64,000 nucleotides of DNA from the NCBI GenBank assembly GCA_965112735.1, contig OZ218951.1, positions 4,836,001 through 4,900,000 of the forward strand, read 5' to 3'. The notes under the pieces are model-generated. The model did not search any database, was not told the origin of the DNA, and saw only the letters and a list, made by a program, of their open reading frames with translations. Shown here one piece after another: positions 650 to 21,264 of the stretch (its first letter is position 1; the number at the start of each line of letters is the position of its first letter). Both the position numbers and the translations under genes were made by a program. This DNA is from Phaeosaccion multiseriatum (taxonomy: Eukaryota > Protista > Ochrophyta, other classes).

Positions 650-2566
650 CAGAGGGGGCAAGGGCGGCAGAGAGGGAGGGCTGCTGATGCGGGGGGCGGC
701 GGCGGTTCTGCAGCAACAGCGGCAATCCGGCCAAGCCTCTGCGGTGAGTGAGGGGAGGGAGAGAGGGAGGGAGTGCGACACTGACGGAGGGAGGGAGTGA
801 CGTAGAGAAAGCGGGAGTGAAAGCGCGAGGGAGTGAATGAGTGCGGGAGGAAGTAAGGTAGTGAGAGCGTGGGGGGAGGAAGGAAGGAAGGAAGGATAGC
901 AGCGTCGCCAGCATGGCAGTGAGGTCTCACAACAACGAAGACAGCGACGTGTGAATTGAATGAGTGCTTGATACCCTCGGTGTGAATTGAATGAGTGCTT
1001 GATACCCTCGGTGTGAATTGAATGAGTGCTTGATACCCTCGGTGTGAATTGAATGAGTGCTTGATACCCTCGGTGTGAATTGAATGAGTGCTTGATACCC
1101 TCGCTCCCGTACCCTGCCCCACTCGTGCTCTGCTGCTCGGCTGCTCTGCTGCTCTGCCCCACCATTCATGCCTGCTCGATCCTGCTGTATGCGGCTCTGT
1201 CCCACTCCTTTCTACTCCTCATCTCTCATCCCAAAGGCCAAGCTTCGGAGTCGTCGGGAGAAGCAACAGCAGCGGCGAGCAGCGGCCATCGCGGCGACAG
1301 GCGTGGTTGGATCCAGCACGGCCAGAGGAGGAGCAAGGCCGGTGACGGCTGCTGCTGCTGTACCACCAACTGTTGTATCTCGAGACGATGTGCTGGAGTG
1401 GGGTAAGCAGATCGAGATGGCACTGGACAGGAGGGCAGAGCTTGTCGAAGGCGGCAAGATGTTCGCCGTCAATGGAAGGTGAGGAGGGAGGCAAGGAGGG
1501 ACGGAGGGGGTAAGGAAGGGATGGACGGAGGGAGGGAGGGAGGGAGGGAGGGAGATGGCAAAGGGTAGAGAATGTTATGGATCCAATGCACGAAGGGATG
1601 GAGCGCTATGGATCTAATGCACGAAGGGATGGAGCGACGAAGCGAGGGAGCGACTCGACTCCCCACAGCACGGACGGTGGTGCGCTCGGCTCTACCCCTC
1701 CCGACATACACTTCCTCCCTGCCTCCTTCCTTCCTTCCTTCCTTCCTTCCTTCCTTCCTTCCTTCCTTCCTTCCTCCCTGCCTCCTTCCTTCCTTCCTTC
1801 CTTCCTTCCTCCCTGCCTCCTTCCTTCCTTCCTTCCTTCCTTGCTCCCTTCCTTCCTTCTACTCCTTGACTTAGGGCACATTCTGATAACCTCCTCCCCC
1901 CCCTCACCTCTCTCTCTCTCTCTCCACTCTCTCCACCCTCTCGTCCCCCTCCCCTCTGTCCACCCTTTCTCCCCTCGTACCAGAGAACAAGTACGCATCA
2001 TCGAAGAAGATCCTTCCGCCGCCGCCGCCGGAGCGCCTTCCTTGCACAGAGACCGTTCCAGATCGGTACAACAGCTCCGACCCGCCCCCTTAGAGTCAGC
2101 GCGGAGCGGTCGGCGATCGTTCCGGGCCTCGCGATCCCCCGGGGCGGAGGGGAGGGGGCAGGAGGAGGATACGTTGGGTGGAGGGCCAGGGGGAGGAGGG
2201 AGCATGAGCCATCGAAGCGTTCCCAATCTCGCCATTGGGGGGGGGAGAAGCTCTGTCTCTGTTTCTGTCTATGGCTCCAACACTCAGGATGATGAGGAGG
2301 AGAAGGGGGGCGTCACAAATGGCGTCAGTACCACCAACACCAGGAGGGGGAGAGGGGGTGGTAGGGCCGGGCAAGGTCATGGACTTGGGTATCAGCAGAG
2401 GCCCAATGGAAGCCCCGTCACAGGGATGGGCAGGAGAGAAGGAGGAGGTATCAGTGGTGGTGGTGGGGTTGGTGTTAGGCCGGAGTCAGCCCCTGTGAGT
2501 CGGGGGGGGGGGAGGGAAGAGGAGGTAGAGGGGAAGAGGAAGGAGGGACGCCACGAGGGAGGGTAG
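1..2566 (+). CDS. 3' part of an intron-containing hypothetical low-complexity protein (5' end outside window); exons <1-170, 528-743, 1237-1478, 1984-2566
   Basis: GT/AG sites give phase-compatible joins (0,0,2) and one open frame ending at TAG 2564-2566; no recognisable domain. Confidence 0.65.
949..1103. repeat. Minisatellite: 5 perfect copies of 31-bp GTGTGAATTGAATGAGTGCTTGATACCCTCG inside an intron
   Basis: Direct reading; copies are head-to-tail with no spacers. Confidence 0.95.
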
Positions 2567-3741
2567 CAGGAGGAGGAGCAAGAGGAGGAACAAGCGGAAG
2601 AGGAGTAGGAAGAGGAGGACGAGGAGGAGGAGGAGGAGGAGGAGGAGGAGGAGGAGGACGAGGAGGAGGAGGAGGAGGAGGAGGAGGAGGAGGAGGAGGA
2701 GGAGGAGGAGGAGGAGGAGGAGGAGGAGGAGGAGGAGGAGGAGGAGGAGGAGGAGGAGGAGGAGGAGGAGGAGGAGGAGGAGGAGGAGGAGGAGGAGGAG
2801 GAGGAGGAGGAGGAGGAGGAGGAGGAGGAGGAGGAGGAGGAGGAGGAGGAGGAGGAGGAGGAGGAGGAGGAGGAGGAGGAGGAGGAGGAGGAGGAGGAGG
2901 AGGAGGAGGAGGAGGAGGAGGAGGAGGAGGAGGAGGAGGAGGAGGAGGAGGAGGAGGAGGAGGAGGAGGAGGAGGAGGAGGAGGAGGAGGAGGAGGAGGA
3001 GGAGGAGGAGGAGGAGGAGGAGGAGGAGGAGGAGGAGGAGGAGGAGGAGGAGGAGGAGGAGGAGGAGGAGGAGGAGGAGGAGGAGGAGGAGGAGGAGGAG
3101 GAGGAGGAGGAGGAGGAGGAGGAGGAGGAGGAGGAGGAGGAGGAGGAGGAGGAGGAGGAGGAGGAGGAGGAGGAGGAGGAGGAGGAGGAGGAGGAGGAGG
3201 AGGAGGAGGAGGAGGAGGAGGAGGAGGAGGAGGAGGAGGAGGAGGAGGAGGAGGAGGAGGAGGAGGAGGAGGAGGAGGAGGAGGAGGAGGAGGAGGAGGA
3301 GGAGGAGGAGGAGGAGGAGGAGGAGGAGGAGGAGGAGGAGGAGGAGGAGGAGGAGGAGGAGGAGGAGGAGGAGGAGGAGGAGGAGGAGGAGGAGGAGGAG
3401 GAGGAGGAGGAGGAGGAGGAGGAGGAGGAGGAGGAGGAGGAGGAGGAGGAGGAGGAGGAGGAGGAGGAGGAGGAGGAGGAGGAGGAGGAGGAGGAGGAGG
3501 AGGAGGAGGAGGAGGAGGAGGAGGAGGAGGAGGAGGAGGAGGAGGAGGAGGAGGAGGAGGAGGAGGAGGAGGAGGAGGAGGAGGAGGAGGAGGAGGAGGA
3601 GGAGGAGGAGGAGGAGGAGGAGGAGGAGGAGGAGGAGGAGGAGGAGGAGGAGGAGGAGGAGGAGGAGGAGGAGGAGGAGGAGGAGGAGGAGGAGGAGGAG
3701 GAGGAGGAGGAGGAGGAGGAGGAGGAGGAGGAGGAGGAGGA
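2567..3741. repeat. (GAG/GGA)n trinucleotide tract, uninterrupted from 2660 to 3741
   Basis: Direct reading; source of the spurious poly-Ser and poly-Pro ORFs. Confidence 0.95.
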
Positions 3742-4743
3742 CAGGGGACGAGGCGGGCGGGGCAGATAAACGTGGAACCCATACTCACTCACCCACTCAC
3801 CCACTCAACCACTCAACCACTCCCCCACTCACTCACTCACCCACTCACCCACCTATTCACTTTCTAGCTCTATTCTATGTACGAAGTTCAGAGAGCATGA
3901 ATGCAGTATATACACACTTCTCCAAGGTCGAGAGGCAAGCAGCAAGATTCACAGATGGAAATATTTGCGGCACTCCGTATCTAGTGCCTCCCCGCCACTC
4001 TCTTCCGTCCGCTGGGAAGCAGGGCTCACCCGTACGCTTCTATCTGATCCCCACTTGATATTGCCGAGGGCAGGGCTGTCTTTGACGAGGGGCTAAGTAG
4101 AGACCAAAAAGTAGCAGAGCACTGAGAAAGGCACTCAGTACTAGCTTATCTCGTTGGTTTACGTAATCTTTAGTAATAGCATAGTGTTTCATAAGCCACT
4201 GAGTACGCGTTGACTCGATTGGGCGGAACTTGCCTTTTGTCTCCGCACGAGCACAAGCCCCGCCTAGGACCTGGCGTTCACCTTTTATCATTGTGTGTTT
4301 AGCAGGCAGTACTTTCTCTAAGCTACGACTACTTGCTGTGCCCGCATGCCCCACTAAGGAAGCCCTCGTCCTCGATCCGTCGGGATTGCACTCTCTCCCC
4401 TCCACATGAGCTCACCTTCCCTCTCCCTCCTCCCTCAAGCTATGCACTTATTCACCCATTGATCCCGTAAGCTACACACATGACTCCCCTACCCCCCCCC
4501 GGACCCCCTTCCTCATATACTCCGCTCCTCTCTGCGACAGAGGATCGCAATCACTTCATCCCTCCTATACCAAGCCAGTGTGCCATGGGCAGTCTCTCCC
4601 TCGCATCGCATCCTGATGTACAGGCCCACTCGCATGGGCTGCATGACTGGTGCAAGCGAGCGAGCTGGAACGATACTCTTTCGTTGTCAAAGTCGTCGTT
4701 GCCCTACCAGCCCCCACCTCGCCCATCCCTCCTGGCTGCTCGC

Positions 4744-6247
4744 TCAGCCCATCTCCTCCGCCATGCTCTCCCACGTCTCGCTCCCCACACTCCAGGGCCT
4801 CTCCAGCGGCAGGATTCCGCTCTCCTTGCCGAAGGTCGGATCCGTCCTTCGCATGAGGTCCAGCGCGGTTTGGGACCGGAAGAAGGCTGTTGCCGCCTCC
4901 ATAAGTCGCTGCTCGATGTCGAGGCCGAGCTGACACCGCCGTGCCCCAGCCAAGGCCTTGTCCACCGAAGCACCGGCCGAGAGGAGCTGCCGCGCAGTCC
5001 CGTGCTGGTGTCTGATGATGGCAGCAAGGAGTGGGGTGGCACTGTGTGATTCCGTGATATCGATGAGGGATCCCGCAGAGATGAGACGAGCGACGACGGC
5101 CTCGTGTCCACAATGCGCGGCAAGGTAGAGAGATGTTGTGCCGTTGTTGGCCCATTTGTCCACACGCGCTCCCGCAGAGAGAAGCTTCTCCACCACGGCG
5201 TCGTGTCCCTCTTGAGAGGCAAGGTGAAGAGGAGTGAAACCTTCGAGGTCAGCCTTGTCGACGTTGGCGTGGGCCCTGATGAGCTGCTGTACAATTCCCG
5301 CATGCCCTTTAACAGATGCCTGATGAAGCGGAGTTCTCCCTTGATTACTTGCGTTGTTGACATCCGCTTGGGCTGAGATGAGGTGCCTTACAATAGAGCT
5401 GTGTCCGTTCTGAGAGGCAACCCAAATCGCAGAGATACCCCGCTTATCGGCCAAGTCGACAATAGCACGCGCCGAGAGCAGCTGCTGCACAGTCGTGGAG
5501 TGCCCCCTTTCCGACGCTACCATCAAGGGAGTAGCTCCTGTGGCGTCCGCCTGGTCGACAGGGGCTCCAATGTCCAACAGCCGCCTCACCACCTGATCCT
5601 GTCCATAGCTGCTAGCCGTCATCAACGGCGTGTATCCAAAGGGGCCCCCTCTGGTGCTGAAGGAGGCCTCTTCCCGCAGCAGCAGGTCTAAGACATCCAG
5701 CCGATCGTGCAGTATAGCCTCAAGCATTGCGGTACTTCCTTCTTCTTCGATGGGCTGATCCAAGCTTGCTCTGCCATGTTTGGCGATGAGCTTCCCAATC
5801 AACGCTTTCACAGTGGGGAAGCTGACTCCTCCCTTCAGAGCCTGCCCCAGCCGCTCCGCCTGGTGTTGTTGAGGGAAACGAGTTCGGGGGGGACAGACGC
5901 ACACACGTACATAGGATGAAAGGGATCAACAGGAAGCTGCTCGCTGCTTCGATACGTGAACATCCCACCGCCGCCCATCGTATCCGCAAAGCCCCCCCTC
6001 GCTTTGCTCTCCCCGAAACACAGAGTCCATCTTAGTGTACTGTGTGAGAAGCGGGGGAGAGGCGCAAACGCCGGGGAAAAAAGGGATCAATAGAGAGCTT
6101 CCCTCTGCGTCGACACGTGAGAACCCACCGCAGCTATCGTATCCGCACAAGAACCCCTCTCTCTTTGCTTCATTCTTTCCGAAGGACACCGTCTTACAGG
6201 AGGACGCTAGGTCGTACCTCGGGCGTTAAAGTTGCCTGCTCCGCCAT
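4744..6247 (-). CDS. Ankyrin-repeat protein ANK1 (8 repeats + conserved C-terminal tail); exons 6247-6218, 5859-4744
   Basis: Eight GxTPL..A...GH..VV..LL..GA repeats; exon 1 MAEQATLTPE|gtacga joins in phase 0 to caccag|AERLGQAL; same structure in all four copies and in the 42-43 kb paralogue. Confidence 0.9.
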
Positions 6248-6445
6248 GGTGAGCAAGCGGCTTCACGATTGATAGGGTAATGCTCACAAGGAGCCTACAG
6301 AAGGCTCTCTCGCTGCTGTGCAGTAGTCGGTGGCTCTGCCTATCACCGTCCCCCCCGCTCTCTGAAAAGTTTTGAAACTATGGAGGCCTCTGAAGCATAC
6401 TTTATTGACTTAATAGGAATCACCTAAGAAACTGAAAGTGTGAAA

Positions 6446-6476
<31 letters not shown>

Positions 6477-6522
6477 TGTGTGTGTAGGTGTCGCTGTGTC
6501 TCCGGGGCCCTCGAGGGGCCGG

Positions 6523-9500
6523 TTACTCCCCCTCTAGGGCGGGGAGGGGGAGTGCGGGACCGGCTCCGCGGTTGAGCCGACCCAGGAAGGCGCGCTCCCG
6601 CTCCGAGAGCCACATCTGGTGGCTGCAGCTGACGAGGCGGCGTAGTCGTGTCAGGACGTGGCCCTTGGTGGTGGAGGAGCCCGTGCGGCCAGTGCGGGTG
6701 ACCACGTGCTCGGCGAGTGCGTGCAGGAGCGATTGCGCCTGTGCGCCGAGTCGGCCGTGGGTCTCGATGGCGAAGGTGGAGAGGCGAACACGCTCTCGGT
6801 CGTAGGTGCCCCTGTAATGTCGCTCCTTGCGGGTCTCGCTGTTGGCGGCTGCCGCTCCCGGTCTAATGTCCGTGCGGAGCACATTCAAGGCCGTCCTGCA
6901 GAGGTTGTTACTCAGGGTTAGGTCAAGCATGTGCGCCGGGTGGGCAAAGGTGGGGTCGCGGGCTCCGGAGAGGGCGCCTCGGGGGAGGGTGGCGTCCATG
7001 CGGAAGGTCCGGGCGATGTTGTGCGGGGGGTTGAAGAGCTCCGAGCTCTCGTGTCCGACGCGGGAGACGTAGTTCTGCTTGAACATGTCCTCGACGGAGG
7101 AGAGCATCCCGGTGTGATAGAGCGAGCTCTGGTTGGGGCACTGGATGGCGTGGGAGGAGTCGGCGCGTGTGTTGCAGCGGGTGCAGACTAGTGCGTCGGG
7201 TTCCCCAGGGCTGTACAGACAGTTGATGCCGAGGGAGCGTCGTAGGGCCCCTACCATGTCTTGGGCCGGCATGGAGACCTGTCCAGGTGAGGTGGCGATG
7301 AAGCCCATGGCCCCGTCGCTGCTCTGGCTCAGGTGCCGAGACTTGGCCTGTCGGCGAGACTCCATGCCGGTATCGGCAGCAGCGGCGTCGTCGGGGAGTC
7401 GGTCCAGTGAGGCGCGGTACTTGTCCCGGCGTTGCGGCGCTAGGCATCTCTGCAGGGCGCGCTGCGTCTGCTGCTGCGGGGCCCAGGTGCCCTGGGCGAG
7501 GCTGGTGTCGAAGGCGTCCTCAGCTCGTTGGCGGTCCGCTGCTGAGGTGAGCGCGAGGTTGACCAGGGGGAGGGGGAGATTCATCTCCAGGTCTTGTCGG
7601 GAGAGGGTCCCGTCTTCGGCGGCGGCCTGGATGGTGGTAACGATGTTTTGGACCGTGCTACTCTGGCGGAGGGCTGGGGCGAGGTCGCGTAGGTCCGCCT
7701 CTGGCCAGATGGCTCCCGGTGTGATCACTGACTGGAGGGTGTCGGCGGCTGCGCCCAGGTAGGCTGGTATGGCGGTGTTGGTGAGGGAGAGGGAGCCCCA
7801 ACCTCCTTGGGACTGGGGAAGGAACATCTGTTGGTGCTGGTGTGAGGCGAGCTGAAGGTGCGACAGTCGGTCCGAGGGTGCGCTGGCGATGATGTCTCCG
7901 ATGGTGTCCGCTCCTGGGAGTTGGAGTAGGGCCTCTCCGACGGCGAGGCTGAGGGCGTCGCCGGGGGAGGCAATGGTGTTGATCGTCTGGCCGGGGGCGG
8001 CACCGCGCAGATAGTGCTGGAGTTTTGGCGAGAGTGACTTCGTGAGCAGGAGGAGGGCGGGTTGTGTCTCCGGCATGAGGGCGATCTGCTCGGCGAGGTT
8101 TAGGAAGGCGTGTCTGTCGGGTCCGTCCACCATGAGTTGGGAGAGGTAACCTCTGATGAAGTCGTCTTGGCCGACTGGGAGGCCGACAATGCTCAAGCCG
8201 CCGTCCTCGATGATGGTGCCGCCGGTGCGGTCCACGAAGGCGCGCTCTTCCATGGTGACGTGGTGGCCCGGGGGGGGGAGGTATCGTTGCTTGTCCGTGC
8301 GGCGGGTGAGGCCGATGGAGGCGAGGTCGGTGGTGAAGGTGTCGAGAGTGGGCTCGAAGTCGGCGAGGTTGCCGCGCCAGGGGTGGACGAAGTCGTCCTG
8401 GTAGGCCCGGGGTGCGGGGATGCCCTCCTCACGGGCCTCGTTGGTCCACTTCTGTTGGAGGGGGTAGAGTGCGCAGCAGAAGTTCTTGCTGGCCTCGGGG
8501 TCGCCTTGTCCGCCGCTGCCGCGGTTGGTGCGTAGCAGCTGGTTGCCGTCGTCAGACAGGTAGATGAGGTCGCGGTCCTTCCCAAGGGCGGCGATGTTGT
8601 GCTCGATGCCACGGGGGTCGACGAGGGCGGTTCCCGTGAGCGTGGCCGCGGTTGTGACTTCGTTATGGGCGTTGCGGAGGTCGCTGGTAGCGACCCAGTA
8701 GCCCATGTCGTGGAGCAGTTGGGCGGATTTGGCGACTTTCTCCGTGCCGTTCTTTGTCGCGACGCCAAGCTGGCCGACGCTCTCGAATGCCTCCTGGTAG
8801 GCGGGCTTGTAGTGGATGCCGTGGGTGGAGTGAAAGAGGCGGGTGAGCGTCTCCTTTACGGCGATGGGGCGTCGTTTCTCGCCGAGAGCGTCGAGGCAGG
8901 CATGGGTGAAGAGGCCGTGGAAGTACTCCGGGAGTTTGCCCAGGGACTCGTGGGCAAGGGGGAACTCGTTGACGAGGAGGAGGAGGAGGTCGGTGCCGTG
9001 GGCGGGGTCTTGAAGCATGTCCTTCAGGTGGGAGTAGCGGAGGCCTGAGGGGCCTGGTCCCGAGTGCCAGTTGGCGTTGATGAGTGCCTGCCGGATGACT
9101 CTGCGGTGGTCGGCGTTGTTGGGCTTAGTGTAGCGGCCGGGGTGTGCGGCGATGGTCCGTTGTGCGGTGGCGCGTGCGGAGGTGATGACCTCTTGTAGGG
9201 TTTCCGGGGCTGGCTCGCGTGGGTGCTTGGCGGCGAGGATGTCGAAGGTGGCCTGGTTGCGGGGGGGTTGATGCTCTGTCGAGGAGAGCGCGCTGGCTGC
9301 CTTGCTGATGCCTCCGGGTCGTGCGGTGAGTCCGGCAGCCCACGATCGTTTGGCTGCATCCGAGCGCACGGGGTCTTGTCGGGGGCGGCGGGCTTGGGCG
9401 TTTGCAATGAGCCTGCGAACGTGCTCCTCAATGACGAGGTTGTGGACGTCGTTGGCCATTTGGGCGCGTGAGTACTTGGGGGCGTGGCCGAGGATGAGGG

Positions 9501-9740
9501 CGGGGAGGAGTTGCCGAAAGTTGAGCCAGGCCCGAGCGGTGTTCCATGCGTCCTCTGGGGCAGCCGGTTCCAGGGCGGCGCGGATGGAGGTGATGAGTTG
9601 CCGGCCGATGTGGAGGTAGAAGGTGGCGAAGTGGAGGTTCTTGTGGAGGTGTTTGACAGTGGGGAAGACGAGTCCTTTGAGGTCGTATTGTGCCAATCCT
9701 TGGATCGTTGGGTGGTCCGAGGTCCAGTGTGGGAGGGGTA
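6523..9740 (-). CDS. Reverse transcriptase - zinc knuckle - restriction-like endonuclease portion of family A polyprotein
   Basis: SGPGPSG, RRPIAV, DLRNAHN, GQGDP, AYQDD, IVGLPVG, LPQSQGGWG; CTRC..HAIQC; RMD...LDLT...KERHY...FAIETHG. Confidence 0.9.
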
Positions 9741-10676
9741 GGGGGGGGGGGGGCCGGCGCCGGGGTCCGGCGCGGGGTCCCTTGCGTCCTCACCAGGAGG
9801 TGGCGCCGGTCCACCTCCTGCGCCGGGTAGCTGTCGTCGGTGGTGGTCGATGACGCCGGTGGTGATGGCGTCCAGTTCCCGTGCGAGTTGGGCGTGCTGT
9901 TCCGGTGTGATGGCGTGGGTGGCGAGCTGGTTGGCGTAGTGGGTCCTGATGTTGTCGACGGTGATGAGCGGCGGGAAGCGAGTGGGGCAGGGCTCGTTTC
10001 CGGCGCGTTGTTCAAGGATGCTGATGCAGTGGAGTCGGCCGTGGGCGTCAAGGTGAAGGTCTTGCAGGGCGGGGGTGGCCACCCTGTCGGCCATGCTGCC
10101 CGCCTGACAGCGGGGGTGGAAGCTGTGGCCGCAGGGGTAGGAGATCGCCTCTCCTGCGGGGATGGCTTCGGCGCAGATGTGGCAGATCTGGCGTGCCGGG
10201 TCGCGCGGGGGGCCGGGTGGTGGGGCCGCAAGGCGGTTGGTAAGGCGGTTGGCCAGGCGTGTAGCGGTGTCCTCCGGGAGGCGGGAGATGAGGGCCTCGT
10301 GGGTTTCCGAGCTGCGGCAGTAGGCGCAATCGGAGCTGGTGGGGAAGTGCGGTGGATCCGTGGCGTTGTGGAAGATGGCGTCGGAGATGCAGTCCGCGTG
10401 GGCTGGATGGGGGTGCTGTGCGCAAGCGTGGAAGGGAGCGGTGGGCGCGCTGTTGAGTGGCTCTAGGCAGTACAGGCAGCGGTCCTGGCCTTCGTCCTCA
10501 GGGGGGTCTTGGTCGTCGTTGTCGTCCGGGTCCTCATGGGGTGGGGTTCCGGGGGGGCTACCGGGGGGCGAGGCGGGGGGGCTGGGGGGTGGGCTGGCTG
10601 ACGGCCCTCCTGGGGGGGGTCCTCCCCCTGGCCCATGGGGGGGGGAGGGTGGGGGGCTGTCCGTGGGGTCGTTGCG
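9741..10676 (-). CDS. N-terminal part of family A polyprotein with Pro-rich region and two RING-type zinc fingers, separated from the RT frame by a -1 shift in a C13 run
   Basis: CLYC...CAQHPHPAHADC...CAYC and CHIC...CGHSFHPRC...; the RT frame is open back to G13 at 9741-9753 (LPLPHWTSDHPTIQGLAQYDL). Confidence 0.75.
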
Positions 10677-11344
10677 TCTGAAGCAGGCATTGGGTTTGGT
10701 GATCCGATTCACAGATCCCGATCCAAGGAGGGCGGAGTTCCTTGTTTGGGTGAAAGGCAGCGGCAGCAAGGCCGTGTTGAGTTTAAGTGCGCACAGACGC
10801 AACAGCGCCGCTGCTGCCTAGATGAGCGGTGCCTTCCTTCCGCCTCCACACGAGCACAACGACCTGGCGTTCACCTTTACAATTGTGTGTTTATTTAGCA
10901 GGGTAGTGCTCTTCTCTAAGCTGCGACTACTTGCTGTGCCCGCATGCCCCACTAAGGAAGCCCTCGTCCTCGATCCGTCGGGATTGCACTCTCTCCCCTC
11001 CACATGAGCTCACCTTCCCTCTCCCTCCTCCCTCAAGCTATGCACTTATTCACCCATTGATCCCGTAAGCTACACACATGACTCCCCTACCCCCCCCCGG
11101 ATCCCCTTCCTCATATACTCCGCTCCTCTCTGCGACAGAGGATCGCAACCACTTCATCGCTCCTGCACCAGACCAGTGTACCATGGGCAGTCCCTCTCTC
11201 GCATCGCATCCTGATGTACAGGCTCACCACTCGCATGGGCTGCATGACTGGTGCAAGCGAGCGAGCTGGAGCGGTACTCTTTCGTTGTCAAAGTCGTCGC
11301 TGCCCTACCAGCCCCCACCTCGCCCATCCCGCCTGACTGCTCGC

Positions 11345-12831
11345 TCAGCCCATCTCCTCCGCCATGCTCTCCCACGTCTCGCTCCCCACACTCCAGGGCC
11401 TCTCCAGCGGCAGGATTCCGCTCTCCTTGCCGAAGGTCGGATCCGTCCTTCGCATGAGGTCCAGCGCGGTTTGGGACCGGAAGAAGGCTGTTGCCGCATC
11501 CATCAGTCGCTGCTCGATGCCGAGGCCGAGCTGACACCGCCGTGCCCCAGCCAAGGCCTTGTCCACCGAAGCACCGGCCGAGAGGAGCTGCCGCGCAGTC
11601 CCGTGGTGGTCTTCGCAGATGGCACCAAGGAGAGGGGTGGTACCGTCTGTTGCCGTGACATCGATGGGGGATCCCGCAGGGATGAGACGAGCGACGATGG
11701 CCTCGTGCCCACCCTCCGCGGCAAGGTGGAGGGGTGAAGCGCCCTTACTGGTTTTCATGTGCACACGTGCTCCCGCAGAGAGAAGCTTCTGCACCACGCC
11801 GTCGTGTCCCTCTTGAGAGGCAAGGTGAAGAGGAGTGAAACCTTCGAGGTCAGCCTTGTCGATGCTGGCGTGGGCCCTGATGAGCTGCTGTACGATGCCT
11901 GCATGCCCTTCAACAGATGCCTGATGAAGCGGAGTTCTCCCTTGATTACTTGCGTGGTTCACATCCGCTTGGGCTGAGATGAGGTGCCTTACAATAGAGC
12001 TGTGTCCGTTCTGAGAGGCGATCCAAATCGCAGAGATACCCCGCTTATCGGCCAAGTCGACAATAGCACGCGCCGAGAGCAGCTGCTGCACAGTCGTGGA
12101 GTGCCCCCTTTCCGACGCTACCATCAAGGGAGTAGCTCCTGCTGTGGCGTCCGCCTGGTCGACAGGGGCTCCAATGTCCAACAGCCGCCTCACCACCTGA
12201 TCGTGTCCGCAGCTGCTAGCCGCTATCAACGGCGTGCCTCCAAAGGGTCCCCCTCTGGTGCTGAAGGAGGCTCCTTCCCGCAGGAGAAGGTCTAAGACAT
12301 CCAGCCGATCGTGCAGTATAGCCTCAAGCATTGCGGTACATCCTTCTTCGTCGATGGGCTGATCCAAGCTTGCTTTGCCATGCTTGGCGATGAGCGTCCC
12401 AATCAGCGCGTTCACGGTGGGGAAGCTGGCTCCTTTCTTCAGAGCCTGCCCCAGCCGCCCCGCCTGGTGTTGTTGAGGGAAACGAGTTCGGGGGGGACAG
12501 ACGCACACACGTACATAGGATGAAAGGGATCAACAGGAAGCTGCTCGCTGCTTCGAAACGTGAGCATCCCACCGCCGCCCATCGTATCCGCAAAAGCCCC
12601 CCCTCGCTTTCCATCTTAGTGTACTGTGTGAGAAGCGGGGGAGAGGCGCAAACTCCGGGGAAAAAAGGGATCAATAGAGAGCTGCCCTCTGCGTCGACAC
12701 GTGAGAACCCACCGCAGCTATCGTATCCGCACAAGAACCCCTCTCTCTTTGCTTCATTCTTTCCGAAGGACACCGTCTTACAGGAGGACGCTAGGTCGTA
12801 CCTCGGGCGATAAAGTTGCCTGCTCCGCCAT
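11345..12831 (-). CDS. Ankyrin-repeat protein ANK2; exons 12831-12802, 12463-11345
   Basis: Intact paralogue of ANK1 with the same splice sites and a one-codon insertion (DATAG). Confidence 0.9.
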
Positions 12832-12922
12832 GGTATGAGCAAGCGGCTTCACGATTGAGACGGTATTGCTCACAAGGGGCCTACGGAAGGCTCTCTCGCT
12901 GCTGTGCAGTAGTCAGTGGCTC

Positions 12923-12989
12923 GTAATTATGAGAGAATTTTTTTTTTTTTTTTTTTTTATAGGAATGACCTAAGGAACTGAAAGTGTGA

Positions 12990-13033
<44 letters not shown>

Positions 13034-13126
13034 GTGTCGCTGAGTCGTCGGGGCCCTCGAGGGGCCGGTTACTCCCCCTCTAGGGCGGGGAGGGGGAGTG
13101 CAGGACCGGCTCCGCGGTTGTGCCGA
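12923..13126 (-). mobile_element. 3'-end fragment (~200 bp) of family A retrotransposon with poly(A) tail, inserted with ~93-bp target deletion
   Basis: Matches 6413-6579 with several substitutions; T-run at ~12938-12958; CCGA microhomology at the 5' junction; host sequence between GGCTC and CCGATCC is missing. Confidence 0.88.
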
Positions 13127-13144
13127 TCCAAGGAGGGCGGAGTT

Positions 13145-13484
13145 TTGAGAGAGAACCAAAAAAAAACACGACCTCATTTGGTCTCTTATAGGATGGAACA
13201 GCAAGGTTTTTGTCCTTCAGCTCAGGTGCTTTCAAAACACTCGCCACCCAAGAACACCTGAACATGAGGGCTGCCTTATGGACGAGCTGTTTGTGTCATT
13301 CGAAGGCGCTTGGCTGTGGCGCTCCAGCGGGCCCGCCATGAGAGATCGATTCGCCACCGGGTTCTGGCCGGTATCAACTTTGTTCCGATGGAGAGGACTG
13401 ACGAGTCGGAGGTAGACGACCTCTGGGAACTTAGTTTTAGTTCCCAGGGGGCTTTCTGGAGTGTATACTAAAAGTAAATATAAA
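13145..13484 (+). mobile_element. Degraded 3'-end fragment of family B retrotransposon in opposite orientation; possible AGTT TSD
   Basis: Translates to ..EQQG..PSAQ..RAVCVIRRRLAVALQRARHERSIRHRVLAGINFVPMERTDESE, near-identical to the C-terminus of ORF 16045-17361; AGTT at 13141-13144 and 13485-13488. Confidence 0.85.
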
Positions 13485-13912
13485 AGTTCGTTTGGGTGAA
13501 AGGCAGCGGCAGCAAGGCCGTGTTGAGTGCGCACAGACGCGACCGCGCCGCTGCTGCCTAGATGGGCGGTGCCTTCCTTCCGCCTCCACACGAACACAAC
13601 GACCTGGCGTTCACCTTTACCATTGTGTGTTTAACCAGGAACAGTTTTCTCTTATCCTACGACTACTTGCTGTGTCCGCATGCCCCATCAAGGAAGCCCT
13701 CGGCCTCGACCCATCGGGACTACACTCTCCCCCCTTCAAACGAACTGACTTTCTCTCTCCCCCCTCCCTCAAGCTATGCACTTCTTCGCCCATTGATCCC
13801 GTAAGCTACACACATGACTCCCCTCCCCCCCCGGACCCCCTTCCTCCTGTACTCCGCCCCTCTCTGCGACAGAGCATCGCAATCACTTCATCGCTCCTAC
13901 ACCAAGCCAGTG

Positions 13913-14165
13913 TCGGCCCCCCGCGGGGCTTCTCGGGCTCCGGGCTTCTAGGCCATAGCCCCCTCCAGGCTTCGGGCTTCTGGCCGCAGGCCAGAGGTCT
14001 GGGCTTCGGGCTTCTCAGGCTGGGGAAAAAAATGGGAGACTTGGGCTTCTCGCTACTTTCCTGCAGGCTTCTGGCCGCAGGCCAGCCCCGGGCTTCTTAC
14101 TTTCGGCCGCAGGCCGCCTCAGACTTCTGCTTATCGGGGGGCCCGAGAAGCCCGCGGGGGGGCGA
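13913..14165. mobile_element. MITE (253 bp) with ~25-bp TIRs TCG(G/C)CCCCCCGCGGG(G)CTTCTCGGGC and 4-bp TSD AGTG
   Basis: Absent from the other three units (empty site CCAGTGTGCC in unit 1); internal GGGCTTC repeats. Confidence 0.9.
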
Positions 14166-14336
14166 AGTGTGCCACGGGCAGTCCCTCTCTCGCATCGCAT
14201 CCTGATGTACAGGCTCTCCACTCGCATGGGCTGCATGACTGGTGCAAGCGAGCGAGCTGGAGCGGTACTCTTTCGTTGCCAAAGTCGTCGTTGCCCCTAC
14301 CAGCCCCCACCTCCCGCATCCCTCCTGGCTGCTCGC

Positions 14337-15839
14337 TCAGCCCATCTCCTCCGCCATGCTCTCCCACGTCTCGCTCCCCACACTCCAGGGCCTCTCCAGC
14401 GGCAGGATTCCGCTCTCCTTGCCGAAGGTCGGATCCGTCCTTCGCATGAGGTCCAGCGCGGTTTGGGACCGGAAGAAGGCTGCTGCCGCATCCATCAGTC
14501 GCTGCTCGAAATCCCGGCTGAGCTGCCACCGCCGTGCCACAGCCAAGGCCTTGTCCACCGAAGCACCGGCCGAGAGGAGCTGCCGCGCAGTCCCGTGGTG
14601 GTATCCGCAGATGGCAGCAAGGAGAGGGGTGGCTCCGCTTGATGCCGTGACATCGATGGGGGATCCCAAAGAGATGAGACGAGCGACGACGGCCTCGTGC
14701 CCATTCTGCGCGGCAAGGTGGAGAGGTGTTGAGCCCTTGTTGGTCCTTTTGTCCACATGTGCTCCCGCAGAGAGGAGCTTCCCCACCACAGCGTCGTGCC
14801 CTTCCTGACAGGCAAGGTGAAGAGGAGTGAAACAGTGGAGGCTAGCCTTGTCGATGCTGGCGTGGGCCCTGATGAGCTGCTGTACGATGCCCGCATGCCC
14901 TTTGAGCGATGCCTCCCGAAGCGGAGTTCTCCCTTGATTATCTGCGTGGTTCACATCCGCTTGGGCTGAGATGAGGTGCCTTACAACAGAGCTGTGTCCG
15001 TTCTGAGAGGCAAGCCATATCGCAGATAAACCCTGCTCGTCCGCCAAGTCGACATTAGCACACGCTGAGAGCAGCTGCTGCACTGTTGTGGAGTGCCCCT
15101 GTTCCGATGCCGCAATCAAGGGAGTACCTCCTGTGGTTTCCGCTTGGTCGACAGGGGCTCCCATGTCCAACAGCCGCCTCACCACCTGATCGTATCCGTA
15201 GCCGCTAGCCGCTATCAATGGCGTGTATCCAAAGGGTCCCCCTCTGGTGCTGAAGGAGGCCCCTTCCCGCAACAGAAGGTCCACAACATCCAGCCGATTG
15301 TGCCGTATAGCCTCAAGCATTGCGGTACATCCTTCTTCGTCGATGGGCTGATCCAAGCTTGCTTTGCCATGCTTGGCGATGAGCTTCCCAATCAGCGCTT
15401 TCACAGTGGGGAAGCTGTCTCCTCTCTTCAGAGCCTGCCCCAGCCGCCCCGCCTGGTTTTGTTGAGGGAAACGAGTTCGGGGGGGAGGGAAGCACGCACG
15501 TACATAGGATAATAGGGATCAGCAGGAAGCTGCTCACTGCTTCGATACGCCAGCATTCCACCGCCGCCATCCTATCCGCAAAGCCCCCCCCTCGCTTTGC
15601 TCTCCCCGAAACACAGAGTCCATCTTAGTGTACTGTCTGAGAAGCGGGGGAGAGGCGCAAACTCCGGGGAAAAAAGGGATCAATAGAGAGCTGTCCTCTG
15701 CGTCGACACGTGAGCTTCCCACCGCAGCTATCGTATCCGCACAAGAACCCCTCTCTTCGCTCCATTCTTTCCGAAGAACACCGTCCTACAGGAGGGCGCT
15801 GGGTCGTACCTCGGGCGTTAAAGTTCCCTGCTGCGCCAT
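14337..15839 (-). CDS. Ankyrin-repeat protein ANK3; exons 15839-15810, 15452-14337
   Basis: Intact paralogue with the same splice sites and reading frame. Confidence 0.9.
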
Positions 15840-15985
15840 GGTGAGCAAGCGGCCTTGCGCTTGAGACGGTAATGCTGACAAGGGGCCTACAGAAGGCTCT
15901 CTCGCTGCTGTGCAGTAGTCGGTGGCTCTGCCTATCATCGTCCCTCCCGGTCTCTGAAAAGGATATCCTGAAAAGTTCTGAAACT

Positions 15986-18726
15986 TACACCCTTAAGTGC
16001 CATCTATGGTTGTCTAAAAGTAATGTCTCACCGCCCCGGGGAACTTAGCCCTCGAGGTCGTGTCCCTCTGACTCATCAGTTCTCCCCATTGGAACAAAGT
16101 TGATACCAGCCAGGATCCTGTGTCGAACCGATCGTTCGTGTCGGGCCCGCTGGAGCGCTACGGCTAATCGCCGCCGAATGACGCAAACAGCTCTCGCATA
16201 AGCCTCCATGTCCAGATGTTCGTGCCCCCCAGCCATGTGGGTGGCAAGTGTTTTCATAAACGTCTGAGCAGAAGGACCAAATGCGCCTTGCTGTTCTATT
16301 GCGAAAGGGACGAGGTGGTACCTCGTGGGGTCATAGTGGATATCCCCACCCTGGCCTTCCATGCCTACCTGTGGCACCCCATACCTGGTCCGCTTAGTTG
16401 CTTCAGCCTTCTTGGCTGCCGCGAGTGCCTCCTTCGATGCCTTGGCCCGATTGGTGATGTTGGTGGCATCTGTGAGCGTGACATCAATCATAAGTGATTT
16501 GTGGCCGTCCCCATATTCGTGGTCGGATGGAAGCTCAAACATCCTAGGGGGGGTCACGATGTCCATCTCCATCTGCTTAGCCACGTGGGCGTCACCCCTC
16601 ACGGCGTTGCTCCCCCCTCTCCCTCGTCGTGGGGTGACCGTTCTTTCCCTCATGAAGAAGGGGAAGCCGGTGTTCTGCACTATCCCTCTGCCCAGGCCCT
16701 CAGTCTTCATCAAGGCGACAAGTGCCTTCTGCACAGCGTCATGTTGGGGTGTGCCGAGCCCCGTCTTTGTGCAGATGATTATGTGCCCCTCCGTCAGCGC
16801 CTTGCCAGGACACTTGTGGCAGTCCTTGCTGTATGTGGGATCGAAGCCTAGCCGGCTCCGGATGGCACCCTTATGCTCGGGAGGCGTGAGGTGGAGTGCA
16901 CCCCCTGCCGTTTTGGTGGGTCGGAGATGAAGCCACGCACCAGCCCCCTTCACGCTGTGACTGAGGGCTCTGGCCAGGCCCTTCTCCCGTGCATCCTGCT
17001 GTGGGATCAGTTTCAGGTGTTCCAGATAGTCTGTCCTCGCCTTCGACGTGAGGAGCTTGGTGAGACGCTTCTGGGCACCTCGCCTAGCCCCGTGGCGGCT
17101 CTGTGGGATGGAGGGTCCGCCCCCATCCAACATCTTGGTTTCCTCTGTCCGCCAGCGTATCTGGTCCACTACATCCTCGTCAACCTCTCCTGGTGCCACG
17201 TCGTGCTCACCACCCCCTGGGTCTTCGTCTCTCCCACCCCCTGGGTCTTCGTCACTCCCGCCCCCTGGGTCCGCCTCGCTGTCGGAGGTTGGCCCGTCTA
17301 CGGGCCCCTCCTGCATTGCCGCTGCGTCGCACCCCTCCGCCCCCCCCCTAGGTTGGACCACGTCGTCGCCCCCAAGTCTGCTCCCTCATCCCCAGACTGT
17401 GTGTCGCCCCCCCCGGGGGTCACACCCGCGGCCGGCTGGTCTCCTCGGCGACCCTCTGGTCTGTGCACTTCATGCGCTGGGGTCTCCTCTCTCTCCGGGA
17501 AGAGCTTGGTGATCAGCCATGGCTCACTCCATCTGTTGTCGCTGAGGTGGGGAATGATTGACGCCGCGCTGTACAGGGATGCTGTGATTACCCATGGCGG
17601 GAGGTCACAGTATGTGGGTCCAAGCGCATCTCGCAGCAAGCCTCCCCCCGTGGGGAGGAGCAGGGCCTCCGGTCTGCTGATGTGGCCGTGGGCAAGCAAC
17701 ACAGCCCATCCTTTCGGGAGGGACTTGAGGAAGCGCTCCTGTTGGCTGAGAGCACCTTCGGCCGCGTCTGCCTTGGGCGTGCTGGGGAGTTGGTCGTGGA
17801 TACGAGCTGCTGCTTGTATCACACGGATATGGTAGCCGTTGGGACCCTGTCCACGCTGTGACAGGGCCTGCCTGCTCCGCGGTCCCACCTCTCTGAGGGC
17901 GAAGGGGAGGGCTTGCATCGCCCCTGCAAGGAAGGCTGCGTCACAGAGTTCGGCTTGGGGGACGAGTCCCAGACCTCCATCGCCCACCTTCAGCCTCGCC
18001 TGTCTCGCTCTCAGCTCATCACCTATGAGGGGGAGCATCCGGAAGGTGTCCCTGCCCCCCTGCAGCACCCTCTCCTCTTGCGCTGCTCTGTGTACCTCTA
18101 GCTAGTATCGCCGTTACTGAGGTGCGCCCTGGATCCAGAGAGTTGGTTGCTGCATACCCCACGAGAGTGTCAAAGAGGGTGAGGGTGTGTCGAATGAGGT
18201 CCGGCGGGGTTACCCTCATCAGGAAGTTGGCCTTGGGAATCATCGACCTGGCTGCCAGGTACATCGAGCTGGAAGAGTCGTCCATGCGCCCAGCGAGCTC
18301 GCAGAGCTGGGGCATCACGCTGGTGGTGCCTAGCTGCTCATCGATGTATTGTTCCACAAAAGCTTGCGTGCCAACTGGCGCTCCAACCACTACAGCCCCT
18401 CAGTTGCCATTCGGGTGATGTATCCAGTGCCCCCCTTCGCCCCCTCCGTCTTCTCGAGCCATGTCCTCTCTTGTGGCGACAGCACCCTCCCCTTCCCCAG
18501 TAGCACGACACACTTGGTGGGGTTGAGGGAGAGGCTGACCTCAGCCAGCCTGCGGGCCATGAACTCCTGGCTCACTAGGTTTGCGCGGTGATAGAGCGGC
18601 TCCCCGCATGCCCCACTCACTCTCATGCCATCTAGGTAGGCGGTGGCTCGTACTCCAGTGCCCTGCATGAGATTATTGTGATCACGCAGGATGGGCAGGA
18701 GGAGGGCGGCGTACATAAGCGCGCCT
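15986..18726 (-). mobile_element. Non-LTR retrotransposon, RLE (CRE-like) type, family B; 5'-truncated within RT and frameshifted; 5-bp TSD AAACT
   Basis: AAACT at 15981-15985 and 18727-18731 (empty site 6375-6379); AYLDG (degenerate YxDD), VVGAPVG, LKVGDGGLG, CHKC..HIIIC, MEMD...IDVT...FAIEQQG spread over four ORF segments. Confidence 0.88.
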
Positions 18727-19403
18727 AAACTATGGAGGCCTCTGAAGCAGGCATTGGGTTTGGTGATCCGATTCACAGATCCCGATCCAAGGAGGGCGGA
18801 GTTCCTTTGTTTGGGTAAAAGGCAGCGGCAGCAAGGCCGTGTTGAGTTTAAGCGCGCACAGACGCGACCGCGCCGCTGCTGCCTAGATGCGCGGTGCCTT
18901 CCTTCCGCCTCCACACGAGCACAACGAACTGTCGTTCACCTTTACCATTGTGTATTTGGCAGGGCAGTACCCTTGCTTCTCTAAGCTACGACTTCTTGCT
19001 GTGCCCGCATGCCCCACCAAGGAAGCCCTCGGCCTCGATCCGTCGGGATTGCACTCTTCCCTCTCCACATGAGCTCACCTTCCCTCTCCCTCCTCCCTCA
19101 AGCTATGCACTTCTTCGCCCATTGATCCCGTAAGCTACACACGTGACTCCCCTCCCCCCCGGACCCTATACCTCCTGTACTCCGCCCCTCTCTGCGACAG
19201 AGGATCGCAATCACTTCATCCCTCCTATACCAAGCCAGTCTGCCATGGGCAGTCTCTCCCTCGCATCGCATCCTGATGTACAGGCTCACTCGCATGGGCT
19301 GCATGCCTGGTGCAAGCGAGCGAGCTGGAGCAGTACTCTTTCGTTGCCGAAGTCGTCGCTGCCCTACCAGCCCCCACCTCGCCCATCCCTCCTGGCTGCT
19401 CGC

Positions 19404-20907
19404 TCAGCCCATCTCCTCCGCCATGCTCTCCCACGTCTCGCTCCCCACACTCCAGGGCCTCTCCAGCGGCAGGATTCCGCTTTCCTTGCCGAAGGTCGGA
19501 TCCGTCCTTCGCATGAGGTCCAGCGCGGTTTGGGACCGGAAGAAGGCTGTTGCCGCATCCATAAGTCGCTGCTCGATGTCCCAGCCGAGCTGCCACCACC
19601 GTGCCCCAGCCAAGGCCTTGTCCACCGAAGCACCGGCCGAGAGGAGCTGCCGCGCAGTCCCGTGGTGGTCTCCGCAGATGGCAGCAAGGAGAGGGGTGGT
19701 ACCGTTTGTTGCCGTGACATCGATGGGGGATCCCGCAGAGATGAGACGAACGACGACGGCCTCGTGCCCACCCTCCGCGGCGAGGTCGAGAGGTGTTGCG
19801 CCATTGTTGGCCCGTTTGTCCACACGTGCTCCCGCAGAGAGAAGCTTCTCCACCACGGCGTCGTGTCCCTCTTGAGAGGCAAGGTGAAGAGGAGTGAAAC
19901 CTTCGAGGTCAGCCTTGTCGATGCTGGCGTGGGCCCTGATGAGCTGCTGTACGATGCCTGCATGACCATAATGCGATGCCTGATGAAGCGGAGTAGTCCC
20001 GCGATTATCTGCGTTGTTCACATCCGCTTGGGCTGAGATGAGGTGCCTTACAATAGAGCTGTGTCCGTTCTGAGAGGCCATCCAAATCGCAGAGATACCC
20101 CGCTTATCGGCCAAGTCGACAATAGCACGCGCCGAGAGCAGCTGCTGCACTATCGTGGAGTGCCCCTGTTCCGATGCCGAACTCAAGGGAGTAATTCCTG
20201 TGGCATCCGCTTGGTCGACAGGGGCCCCAATATCCAACAGCCGCCTCACCACCTGATCGTGTCCAACGCGGCTAGTCGCTATCAACGGCGTGCTTCCAAA
20301 GCGCCCCCCTCTGGTGCTGAAGGAGCCCCCTTCCCGCAACAGAAGGTCTAAGACATCCAGCCGATCGTGCACTGCAGCCCTAAACACTGCGGTACATCCT
20401 TCGTCGTCGATGGGCTGATCCAAGCTTGCTTTGCCGTGCTTGGCGATGAGCTTCCCAATCAGCGCTTTCACCGTGGGGAAGCTGTCTTCTCTGACCAGGG
20501 CCTTTTCGAGTCGCCGCGCCTGGTGTTGTTGAGGGCAACGAAGTGGGGAAGGAGAGACGCACGCACGTACATAGGATGAAAGGGATCAGCAGGAAGCTGC
20601 TCACTGCTTCGATACGCCAACATCCCACCGCCGCCATCCTATCCGCAAAGCCCCCCCTCGCTTTGCTCTCCCCGAAACACAGAGTCCATCTTGGTATACT
20701 GTCTTGGGAAGCGGGGGAGAGGCGCAAACGCCGGGGAAAAAGGGATCAATAGAGCGCTGCCCTCTGCGTCGACACGTGAGCTTCCCACCGCAGCTATCGT
20801 ATCCGCACACAAGAACCCCTCTCTTTGCTCCATTCTTTCCGAAGAACACCGTCGTAGAGGAGGGCGCTAGGTCGTACCTCGGGCGTTATAGCTGCCTGCT
20901 GCGCCAT
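19404..20907 (-). CDS. Ankyrin-repeat protein ANK4; exons 20907-20878, 20519-19404
   Basis: Intact paralogue; outermost copy, head-to-head with the gene at 21265. Confidence 0.9.
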
Positions 20908-21264
20908 GGTGAGCAAGCGGTTCCGCCCTTGAGACGAGCAGTGCTGACAAGGGGCCTACAGAAGGCTCTCTCGCTGCTGTGCCTGCTGTGCAGTAGTCAG
21001 TCGCCCTGCCTGTCACGGCCCTCCCGTTTTTTGGTTGTTGGAGGCCTCTGAAGGCATCGGGGGGCTTGATGCTCCAGAGTCACAGATCCCGATCTTTAGA
21101 AGGAGACCCCTCAGCTTCTCAACCTTGAAAGAGAAGGATACAATCGTGGAGCATAGAGCACTGATGGCGTAGGAAGCACACGCAACACGCAGCCAAGGAC
21201 GTGTAGGGGCTACGCGACACACGATCAGAAAGATCGCAGTCAGTTCAGCAGGGCAACGGCAAGA

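What the first reader, a model, noticed from the sequence alone, without database searches (positions are those of the whole stretch)
6336..18731. Four separate non-LTR insertions from two families within one ~115-bp promoter window
Projected onto the empty unit, the insertion points are: after GGCTC (12922; family A fragment with ~93-bp deletion), at AAACT (15985; family B), at TCTGAAGCA (6397; family A) and at AGTT (13144; family B, opposite strand). All lie about 90-205 bp upstream of the ankyrin ATG. Junctions, TSDs and orientations differ, so they were not copied by the tandem duplication. Targeting is region-specific rather than base-specific, unlike R2-type elements. The only promoter without an insertion (ANK4) is diverged and shared head-to-head with the AT-hook gene, so selection against insertion there plus open chromatin in redundant copies is a plain alternative.
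Basis: seen in the sequence. Interest (0 to 1): 0.8.

Follow-up and report, generated by a model that had tools for sequence, protein, structure and literature searches.

The report
Retrotransposon pile-up between tandem ankyrin genes
Two families of R2-like jumping genes have landed four separate times in the short gaps between tandem ankyrin genes of this alga, but about 99% of their copies lie elsewhere, so the pile-up looks like an accessible, tolerant landing zone and not a dedicated homing site.

Summary
Three spacers between four tandem ankyrin genes hold four independent insertions. Their junctions, target duplications and orientations all differ, and they map to -89..-204 from the putative ATG.

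Both families are LINEs with a restriction-like endonuclease. Family A shows RT homology to L1 and R2, and its C-terminal model matches only R2 structures. Family B's C-terminus is homologous to A's.

They do not home to this spacer:
- Only 1 of 84 A and 1 of 127 B canonical 3' ends lie in ankyrin arrays.
- At least 16 homologous spacers are empty.
- A normally hits C-runs, and the window's two A sites are non-canonical.
- The "115-bp window" is barely narrower than the roughly 320-bp intergenic gap (P=0.14).

There is still a modest hot zone. Independent B-like insertions sit within about 20 bp of the same spot in two other arrays (P about 0.02). All junctions cluster around a near-invariant 59-bp element that also marks the duplication joints.

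Best reading: opportunistic integration near an accessible promoter element, surviving only in redundant ANK-to-ANK promoters. Targeting and selection cannot be separated here.

An unchecked note from this scan (s1-346035) reports a similar insertion upstream of a 7TM tandem gene elsewhere in this genome.

The parts
4268..6397 (-). Ankyrin unit 1: main ORF 4744-5904, putative ATG at 6247, promoter up to the family A insertion
   Evidence: Pfam Ank/Ank_2 at E 1e-46; self-BLAST
6398..10676 (-). Family A RLE-type LINE, apparently full-length (4279 bp). The RT-CCHC-RLE ORF is 6523-9696. The upstream ORF with RING-like fingers is 9024-10676. The 9-bp TSD TCTGAAGCA is at 6389-6397 and 10677-10685
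10677..12922 (-). Ankyrin unit 2, including the conserved 59-bp block (its right part is 10686-10728)
12923..13122 (-). 5'-truncated family A 3' fragment: 15-nt filler 12923-12937, poly(T) 12938-12958, then the A 3' end, 93% identical to the full copy. About 94 bp of the target is deleted, including the conserved block. The 5' junction is by microhomology
13123..13143 (.). 21-bp remnant of the spacer lying between the two insertions of unit 2
13144..13480 (+). Family B-like 3' fragment in the opposite orientation. It is 81% identical at the DNA level and 57% at the protein level to the B copy in unit 3. Inserted at AGTT
13481..15985 (-). Ankyrin unit 3. It carries an unrelated 252-bp MITE-like insertion at 13914-14165
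15986..18726 (-). Family B RLE-type LINE, 5'-truncated to 2741 bp and frameshifted. The CCHC-RLE ORF is 16045-17361. The 5-bp TSD AAACT is at 15981-15985 and 18727-18731. The canonical ATATAT 3' tail is missing
18732..21030 (-). Ankyrin unit 4. Its promoter is uninterrupted, carries a diverged block, and is head-to-head with a plus-strand gene whose ATG is near 21266

Best explanation
Two dispersed LINE families with a restriction-like endonuclease inserted by target-primed reverse transcription, four separate times. The targets were the roughly 320-bp intergenic spacers of a tandem ankyrin array. These elements are not specific for this spacer.

The insertions accumulated for two reasons:
(i) The DNA around a near-invariant 59-bp promoter element is unusually open to nicking or integration. 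This element also forms the joints of the tandem duplication. (Inferred.)
(ii) Insertions survive only in the redundant ANK-to-ANK promoters. The same promoter, when shared head-to-head with a partner gene, stays empty. (Inferred from the distribution.)

Shown here: the independence of the events, the element class, the dispersal of the families, the non-canonical nature of the family A sites, and the recurrence in paralogous arrays. Not shown: chromatin accessibility and selection.
For: Independence: the junctions, TSDs and orientations all differ.

Element class:
- A profile built from A and 15 relatives hits L1 ORF2p and R2 RTs in the PDB at E 2e-14 to 6e-10, with one R2 chain at 2e-8.
- 14 of the 16 alignment members hit Pfam RVT_1; A itself does not.
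- An AF2 model of the A C-terminus (pLDDT 87.7) has R2 proteins as its seven best Foldseek hits, probability at least 0.99.
- The B C-terminus aligns to A's at E 1e-9.

TPRT hallmarks: 5' truncations, 5' inversions, and TSDs of 5-14 bp.

Dispersal: there are 84 exact A and 127 exact B 3' ends genome-wide. Only the window's own copies fall in ankyrin arrays.

Non-canonical sites: A's flanks carry a C-run at positions +3 to +7. The two window sites score only in the top 12-39% of all positions in the window, below 19 of the 23 training sites. The best canonical site in the spacer is unused.

Recurrence: independent B-like insertions lie at the left edge of the same block in two other arrays. One is in the C15 array and has a poly-A tail and a different truncation point. 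The other is at C2:2.019 Mb (L083). A MITE and another junction abut the block in L082. Four or more of seven RLE events fall within 19 bp of a 320-bp spacer, P=0.02.

Tolerance: the empty homologous promoters in C15 and C9 are all followed by the partner gene. A MITE and a 477-bp insert in the 3' regions show that other non-coding parts of the unit can also accept DNA.
Against: - There are no chromatin, TSS or expression data.
- The window's four points are not significantly clustered within the intergenic gap (P=0.14).
- The family-wide P of 0.02 is post hoc.
- The sister inverted array at C2:4.80 Mb has three empty ANK-to-ANK junctions of the same sequence.
- A and B 3' ends co-localise elsewhere too: 9 A ends lie within 10 kb of a B end, against 3.1 expected. 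At least 7 of 26 A flanks are other repeats. General nesting of transposable elements could therefore contribute.
Confidence: 0.5

Rival explanations
1. Pure survivorship. Integration is essentially random with respect to this locus. The roughly 320-bp spacers of redundant tandem copies are simply among the few places in a compact genome where an insertion is not removed by selection.
For: The four points span 115 of about 320 intergenic bp, P=0.14. No RLE insertion lies in the roughly 6 kb of ankyrin gene bodies. The bidirectional promoters are all empty. About 99% of copies are elsewhere.
Against: With roughly 600 A/B copies, the expected number per spacer is about 0.015, assuming some 13 Mb of intergenic DNA. 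Yet about half of the independent ANK-to-ANK junction lineages are hit. Three B-like 5' junctions in different arrays fall within 11 bp of each other. The 3' UTR regions accept a MITE and a 477-bp insert but no RLE element.
Confidence: 0.25
2. Break capture. The conserved block is a recombination or double-strand-break hotspot, and it is also the joint of the tandem duplications. LINE cDNAs are primed at, or captured by, pre-existing breaks there.
For: The block flanks the ankyrin unit on both sides and marks the array edges and joints. The A fragment of unit 2 has filler DNA, a poly-A tail, a microhomology junction and a 94-bp target deletion. L083 has a target deletion of about 100 bp that ends at the block. 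The window's A and B copies use non-canonical sites or lack the canonical 3' tail. An unchecked scan note reports mosaic ankyrin copies.
Against: The two young insertions have clean 9-bp and 5-bp TSDs, which is typical of endonuclease-made staggered nicks. There is no direct evidence of breaks.
Confidence: 0.13
3. True regional targeting. The A or B proteins recognise the block, or are tethered to a host factor bound to it, and they integrate at its edges.
For: Junctions cluster from -46 to +70 around a 59-bp element that is near-invariant in 36 copies while its flanks are about 80% identical. The site is re-used in three arrays in the same orientation.
Against: At least 25 block copies are unoccupied. 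Only about 1% of A and B copies are near a block. Two unrelated element types, a MITE and RLE LINEs, also abut it. That argues for a property of the DNA, not for recognition by one element's protein.
Confidence: 0.1
4. Not independent. One ancestral insertion was rearranged or spread by gene conversion, or the pattern is an assembly artefact.
For: Unit 2 holds two adjacent fragments only 21 bp apart, which could be one complex event.
Against: The families, truncation points, TSDs and orientations all differ. The A and B copies in units 1 and 3 are about 99% identical to copies on other contigs, whereas the ankyrin units differ from each other by 7-10%.
Confidence: 0.02

Closest known systems
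R2 and other LINEs with a restriction-like endonuclease (the R2, R4, NeSL and CRE clades)
   Same: They share an RT with non-LTR motifs, a CCHC knuckle and a C-terminal PD-(D/E)xK nuclease. The family A C-terminal model matches only R2 cryo-EM structures. TPRT hallmarks are present. They tend to hit repeated DNA: A hit the same MITE terminal repeat three times and re-inserts at its own TSD.
   Different: Those clades are mostly strictly site-specific for rRNA, spliced-leader or snRNA genes or for microsatellites (PMC4640811). A and B are dispersed on all large contigs with only a loose motif. No ZF/Myb N-terminus was found; A has RING-like fingers instead. The clade could not be assigned because no reference set was available.
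HERO clade and non-site-specific R2-like elements
   Same: These are RLE LINEs that insert at many genomic sites (PMC4640811; title and abstract of PMC7650587).
   Different: Phylogenetic membership was not tested here. A recurrent hot zone at a Pol II promoter element has not, to my knowledge, been reported for them.
Retroelements that integrate upstream of genes: Tf1 next to Sap1 sites, Ty1/Ty3 and Dictyostelium TRE5-A upstream of Pol III genes (from general knowledge, not checked here)
   Same: Insertions pile up within tens of bp of a protein-bound or nucleosome-free upstream element, at variable bases.
   Different: In those cases most copies obey the rule and a tethering factor is known. 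Here only about 1% of copies are at the site and no factor is known.
Endonuclease-independent or break-associated L1 insertion (from general knowledge)
   Same: The unit 2 A fragment and the L083 B-like copy show target deletions, filler DNA and microhomology junctions.
   Different: The two young copies have clean TSDs, as in ordinary TPRT.

Membership tests
Non-LTR retrotransposon (LINE) | A reverse transcriptase of the non-LTR type | tested here: met
   The family A ORF alone has no Pfam or PDB hit. A profile of A with 15 relatives hits L1 ORF2p at about E 1e-14 and R2 at about E 1e-12. 14 of the 16 alignment members hit RVT_1. The motifs QGDP and Y-DD are visible in the sequence.
Non-LTR retrotransposon (LINE) | TPRT footprints: 5' truncation, variable TSDs, and no LTRs or TIRs | tested here: met
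   Family A copies range from 371 to over 2000 bp and share one 3' end. TSDs are 5-14 bp. L012, L014 and L016 show 5' inversions.
RLE-bearing LINE (R2-like architecture) | A C-terminal CCHC motif plus a PD-(D/E)xK restriction-like endonuclease | tested here: met
   C838, H849, C853, D901, D925, K957 and Y961 are at least 90% conserved across the 16 aligned sequences; the first CCHC cysteine, C835, is read from the sequence and was not in that list. The AF2 model has pLDDT 87.7. Its top seven Foldseek hits are all R2 proteins, followed by PD-(D/E)xK nucleases. The B ORF aligns to this domain at E 1e-9.
RLE-bearing LINE (R2-like architecture) | No N-terminal APE endonuclease | tested here: met
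   Pfam finds only weak RING-like fingers in the upstream ORF and no Exo_endo_phos domain.
Site-specific RLE clades (R2, R4, NeSL, CRE) | Most copies sit at one defined target sequence | tested here: not met
   The 84 family A and 127 family B 3' ends are scattered over the contigs. A's flanks share only a C-run. At least 25 spacer blocks are unoccupied.
Site-specific RLE clades (R2, R4, NeSL, CRE) | Phylogenetic placement of the RT within a named clade | not testable with these tools
   No named reference sequences were available. The 'CRE-like' label in earlier scan notes is unverified.
Promoter-targeting retroelement (Tf1, Ty or TRE type behaviour) | A genome-wide excess of insertions at a fixed distance from a bound upstream element | tested here: inconclusive
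   There is a local excess around the 59-bp block in four ankyrin arrays (P=0.02).

The most novel reading that the evidence does not exclude
RLE-type LINEs, long regarded as sequence-specific homers, may be steered here to the edges of a protein-bound 59-bp Pol II promoter element. The steering would come from a host factor or a chromatin feature, not from the DNA sequence. This would be a regional, tether-like targeting mode not yet described for this class. The same element would also act as the recombination joint that builds the tandem array.
Probability: 0.12. Interest if true: 0.75.

Novelty: new member of a known kind. Interest (0 to 1): 0.4.

Why it matters
If the hot zone reflects insertion preference, RLE LINEs would be able to use regional cues such as open promoters or bound factors. 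That bears on how R2-like enzymes choose targets, and so on their use as gene-insertion tools. It also bears on how tandem gene families become sinks for transposable elements.

If it reflects selection alone, the locus is an ordinary example of insertions being tolerated in redundant promoters.

Either way, the locus is useful. It offers matched filled and empty sites: the sister array at C2:4.80 Mb and the arrays on C15 and C9. It also carries two young, apparently recently active RLE families with clean junctions, which makes it a convenient natural test bed.

Tried and rejected
- Pfam and PDB searches with the single A and B ORFs gave nothing. A profile and a structure model were needed.
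- The word-based protein search found only two relatives. The full HMMER search found 355, but none carries a name, so no clade could be assigned.
I did not try to read flanks out by N-padded patterns.
- The idea that A's own sequence motif explains the sites is rejected. The PWM scores of both window sites are unremarkable.
- The idea that A prefers AT-rich DNA is rejected. Its flank GC of 0.57-0.59 equals background.
- The idea that B lands in long AT tracts is rejected. Only 1 copy has eight more A/T bases after the tail. B's true preference stays unknown.
- The idea that the conserved block is a small RNA gene or a hairpin is rejected. There is no Rfam hit and the folding z-score is 0.68.
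- The idea that the spacer is the elements' main target is rejected.
Full report
LOCUS. The window is G000:C2:4836001-4900000 of a 67-Mb, 22-contig eukaryotic genome with about 60% GC. Earlier scan notes call the organism an alga. A TGTAA-type poly(A) signal fits a green alga.

Self-comparison shows four tandem units, 90-93% identical, each carrying a minus-strand ankyrin-repeat gene. The three gaps between the units are interrupted.

OBSERVATION.

- Family A (6398-10676, minus strand) is flanked by a 9-bp duplication, TCTGAAGCA.
- Unit 2 holds a 5'-truncated A 3' end with an antisense poly-A tail, 15 nt of filler, a microhomology 5' junction and a target deletion of about 94 bp.
- 21 bp further on, unit 2 also holds a B-like 3' fragment in the opposite orientation, inserted at AGTT.
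- Family B (15986-18726, minus strand, 5'-truncated) is flanked by AAACT.
- Two real empty sites in a sister inverted array (C2:4.805 and 4.807 Mb; L064 and L062) validate the reconstructed target.
- The insertion points lie 89 to 204 bp upstream of a conserved CCATGG, the putative start codon.
- The A and B copies in units 1 and 3 are about 99% identical to copies on other contigs, while the ankyrin units differ by 7-10%. The insertions are therefore later than the duplication and independent of each other.

WHAT THE ELEMENTS ARE. Neither ORF hits Pfam or the PDB on its own. An exhaustive HMMER search found 355 relatives of the 1057-aa family A ORF.

- A profile of 16 sequences hits L1 ORF2p and R2 reverse transcriptases at E 2e-14 to 6e-10, with one R2 chain at 2e-8. 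14 of the 16 alignment members hit RVT_1.
- The C-terminal 278 residues carry a conserved CCHC motif and D...D...K..Y motifs. They fold with pLDDT 87.7. The seven best structural matches are all R2 retrotransposon proteins, followed by PD-(D/E)xK nucleases.
- The family B ORF (16045-17361) aligns to this domain at E 1e-9 and to the C-termini of A's relatives.
- Family A copies elsewhere show 5' truncation, 5' inversions and 5-14-bp TSDs.

Both families are therefore LINEs with a restriction-like endonuclease, that is, R2-type in architecture. The named clade could not be assigned.

Family A has 84 exact 3' termini and family B has 127, on all large contigs. Only the window's own copies lie in ankyrin arrays.

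The flanks of 23 independent A copies are unrelated to the spacer. They share a C-run at +3 to +7 after the terminal AAAGT. A hit the terminal inverted repeat (CGACCCCTGAC) of a MITE three independent times, and it re-inserts at its own target duplication (L018, L019).

Against this matrix, the two A sites in the window score only in the top 12-39% of all window positions. The best canonical site in the spacer, a C7 run on the other strand, is unused.

Family B normally ends in ATATAT or ATATAA (82 of 127 copies); the window copy lacks this tail. It is not a long AT tract.

IS THE 115-BP WINDOW SPECIAL? A TGTAA on the minus strand at 10878-10882 suggests that the next gene's mRNA ends about 170 bp beyond the insertion zone. 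The whole gap from the ATG to that poly(A) site would then be about 320 bp.

Four random points in 320 bp fall within 115 bp with P=0.14. The window alone therefore gives no evidence of targeting finer than 'intergenic'. The number of hits is still far above a uniform expectation. With roughly 600 A/B copies and an assumed 13 Mb of intergenic DNA, that expectation is about 0.015 per spacer.

EVIDENCE FROM PARALOGOUS ARRAYS. Homologous spacers occur in arrays at C15:2.34-2.44 Mb, C9:0.43 Mb, C9:1.79 Mb, C2:4.80 Mb, C2:2.0-2.2 Mb and elsewhere. At least 16 are empty.

Several others are filled by independent events:

- Six ANK-to-ANK junctions in C15 share one B-like insertion. It has a poly-A tail and is truncated at 752 nt, and its ends lie 1-14 bp left of the same GGAGGCCTCTGAAG motif.
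- L083 (C2:2.019 Mb) has a B-like copy whose 5' junction lies inside that motif, with a target deletion of about 100 bp.
- L085 has a B-like fragment at the ATG.
- L082 has a MITE and another junction abutting the motif.

Four of the seven RLE events fall within 19 bp, P=0.02 for a 320-bp spacer. This test is post hoc.

THE BLOCK. All of these junctions surround a 59-bp element. Its right part is window:10686-10728 and its left part is 6382-6397. It is near-invariant in 36 distinct copies, while its flanks are about 80% identical.

- It lies upstream of every ankyrin gene, whatever follows it.
- It also lies beyond the gene's 3' end (L070, L073, L074) and at an array edge (L078). It therefore flanks the duplicated unit and forms the duplication joints.
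- It has no Rfam match and no stable fold.

WHO IS EMPTY. In C15 and C9 the empty promoters are all followed, within about 15 bp of the block, by a plus-strand partner gene. These are bidirectional promoters, like that of ANK4.

ANK-to-ANK junctions are the ones that get filled, but the sister array has three empty ones. This distribution fits selection against insertions in shared promoters. The 3' regions of the units do accept a 252-bp MITE (13914-14165) and a 477-bp insert, but no RLE element.

GENOME-WIDE CONTEXT. Nine family A ends lie within 10 kb of a family B end, against 3.1 expected (Poisson P about 0.005). Three of the 29 sampled A loci outside the window contain B sequence. At least 7 of 26 A flanks are other repeats. 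Co-occurrence of A and B is thus a general habit of these elements and is not peculiar to ankyrin spacers.

VERDICT. Spacer-specific homing is refuted.

A modest, real-looking hot zone around a conserved promoter and joint element remains. I rate the explanations as follows:

- Accessible or nick-prone DNA combined with tolerance in redundant promoters: 0.5.
- Pure survivorship: 0.25.
- Break capture at a recombination-prone joint: 0.13.
- True tethering or recognition of the block: 0.1.

Separating these needs chromatin, break and polymorphism data, and a full genome-wide junction census.

Noticed in passing
window 6382-6397 + 10686-10728; 18734-18792; 36 copies in loci L035-L090: A 59-bp element is near-invariant while its flanks are about 80% identical. 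It begins GGAGGCCTCTGAAG and contains three GATCC repeats. It lies upstream of every ankyrin gene and also beyond the gene's 3' end, so it brackets the duplicated unit and forms the array joints. It has no Rfam hit and no stable fold.
   Followed up: partly
L005, L021, L020 (C9:1.346 Mb, C10:0.978 Mb, C12:0.112 Mb); a copy of the target MITE at window 24914-24989: Family A inserted three independent times at the terminal inverted repeat (CGACCCCTGAC) of a small palindromic MITE-like element. It also stacks repeatedly at its own target duplication (three times in L018, twice in L019). This points to a real but loose C-run target preference.
   Followed up: partly
window 13914-14165; also L019 1138-1386 and L082 1275-1473: A 252-bp MITE-like element with GC-rich terminal inverted repeats sits in the 3' region of ankyrin unit 3. 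The same family abuts the conserved block in L082 and lies next to a family A copy in L019.
   Followed up: partly
genome-wide: Family B normally ends ...GGGTGTA followed by ATATAT or ATATAA (82 of 127 exact termini). Tandem 3' ends 20-180 bp apart occur at several loci. Seven B termini lie within 51 kb at C3:5.476-5.528 Mb.
   Followed up: no
window 9024-10802 and 18390-18914 (minus strand): Open reading frames run from the spacer, downstream of the neighbouring ankyrin gene, straight into the 5' ends of both the A and the B copy in the sense orientation. This could be chance in GC-rich DNA, or it could permit read-through expression.
   Followed up: no
window 9024-10676 (minus strand): The ORF upstream of the family A RT gives weak Pfam RING-type finger hits (E 4e-4 to 1e-3, below the curated cut-off), where R2 has ZF/Myb DNA-binding motifs.
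   Followed up: no
window 2491-3800: A long array of 9/12/15-bp repeats with extreme GC and AT skew lies just beyond the 3' end of ankyrin unit 1.
   Followed up: no
C2:4802830-4808816 versus window 4268-21053: An inverted sister ankyrin array about 30 kb upstream of the window has the same ANK-to-ANK junctions, 88-96% identical, all of them empty. It is a natural control for the filled spacers.
   Followed up: partly
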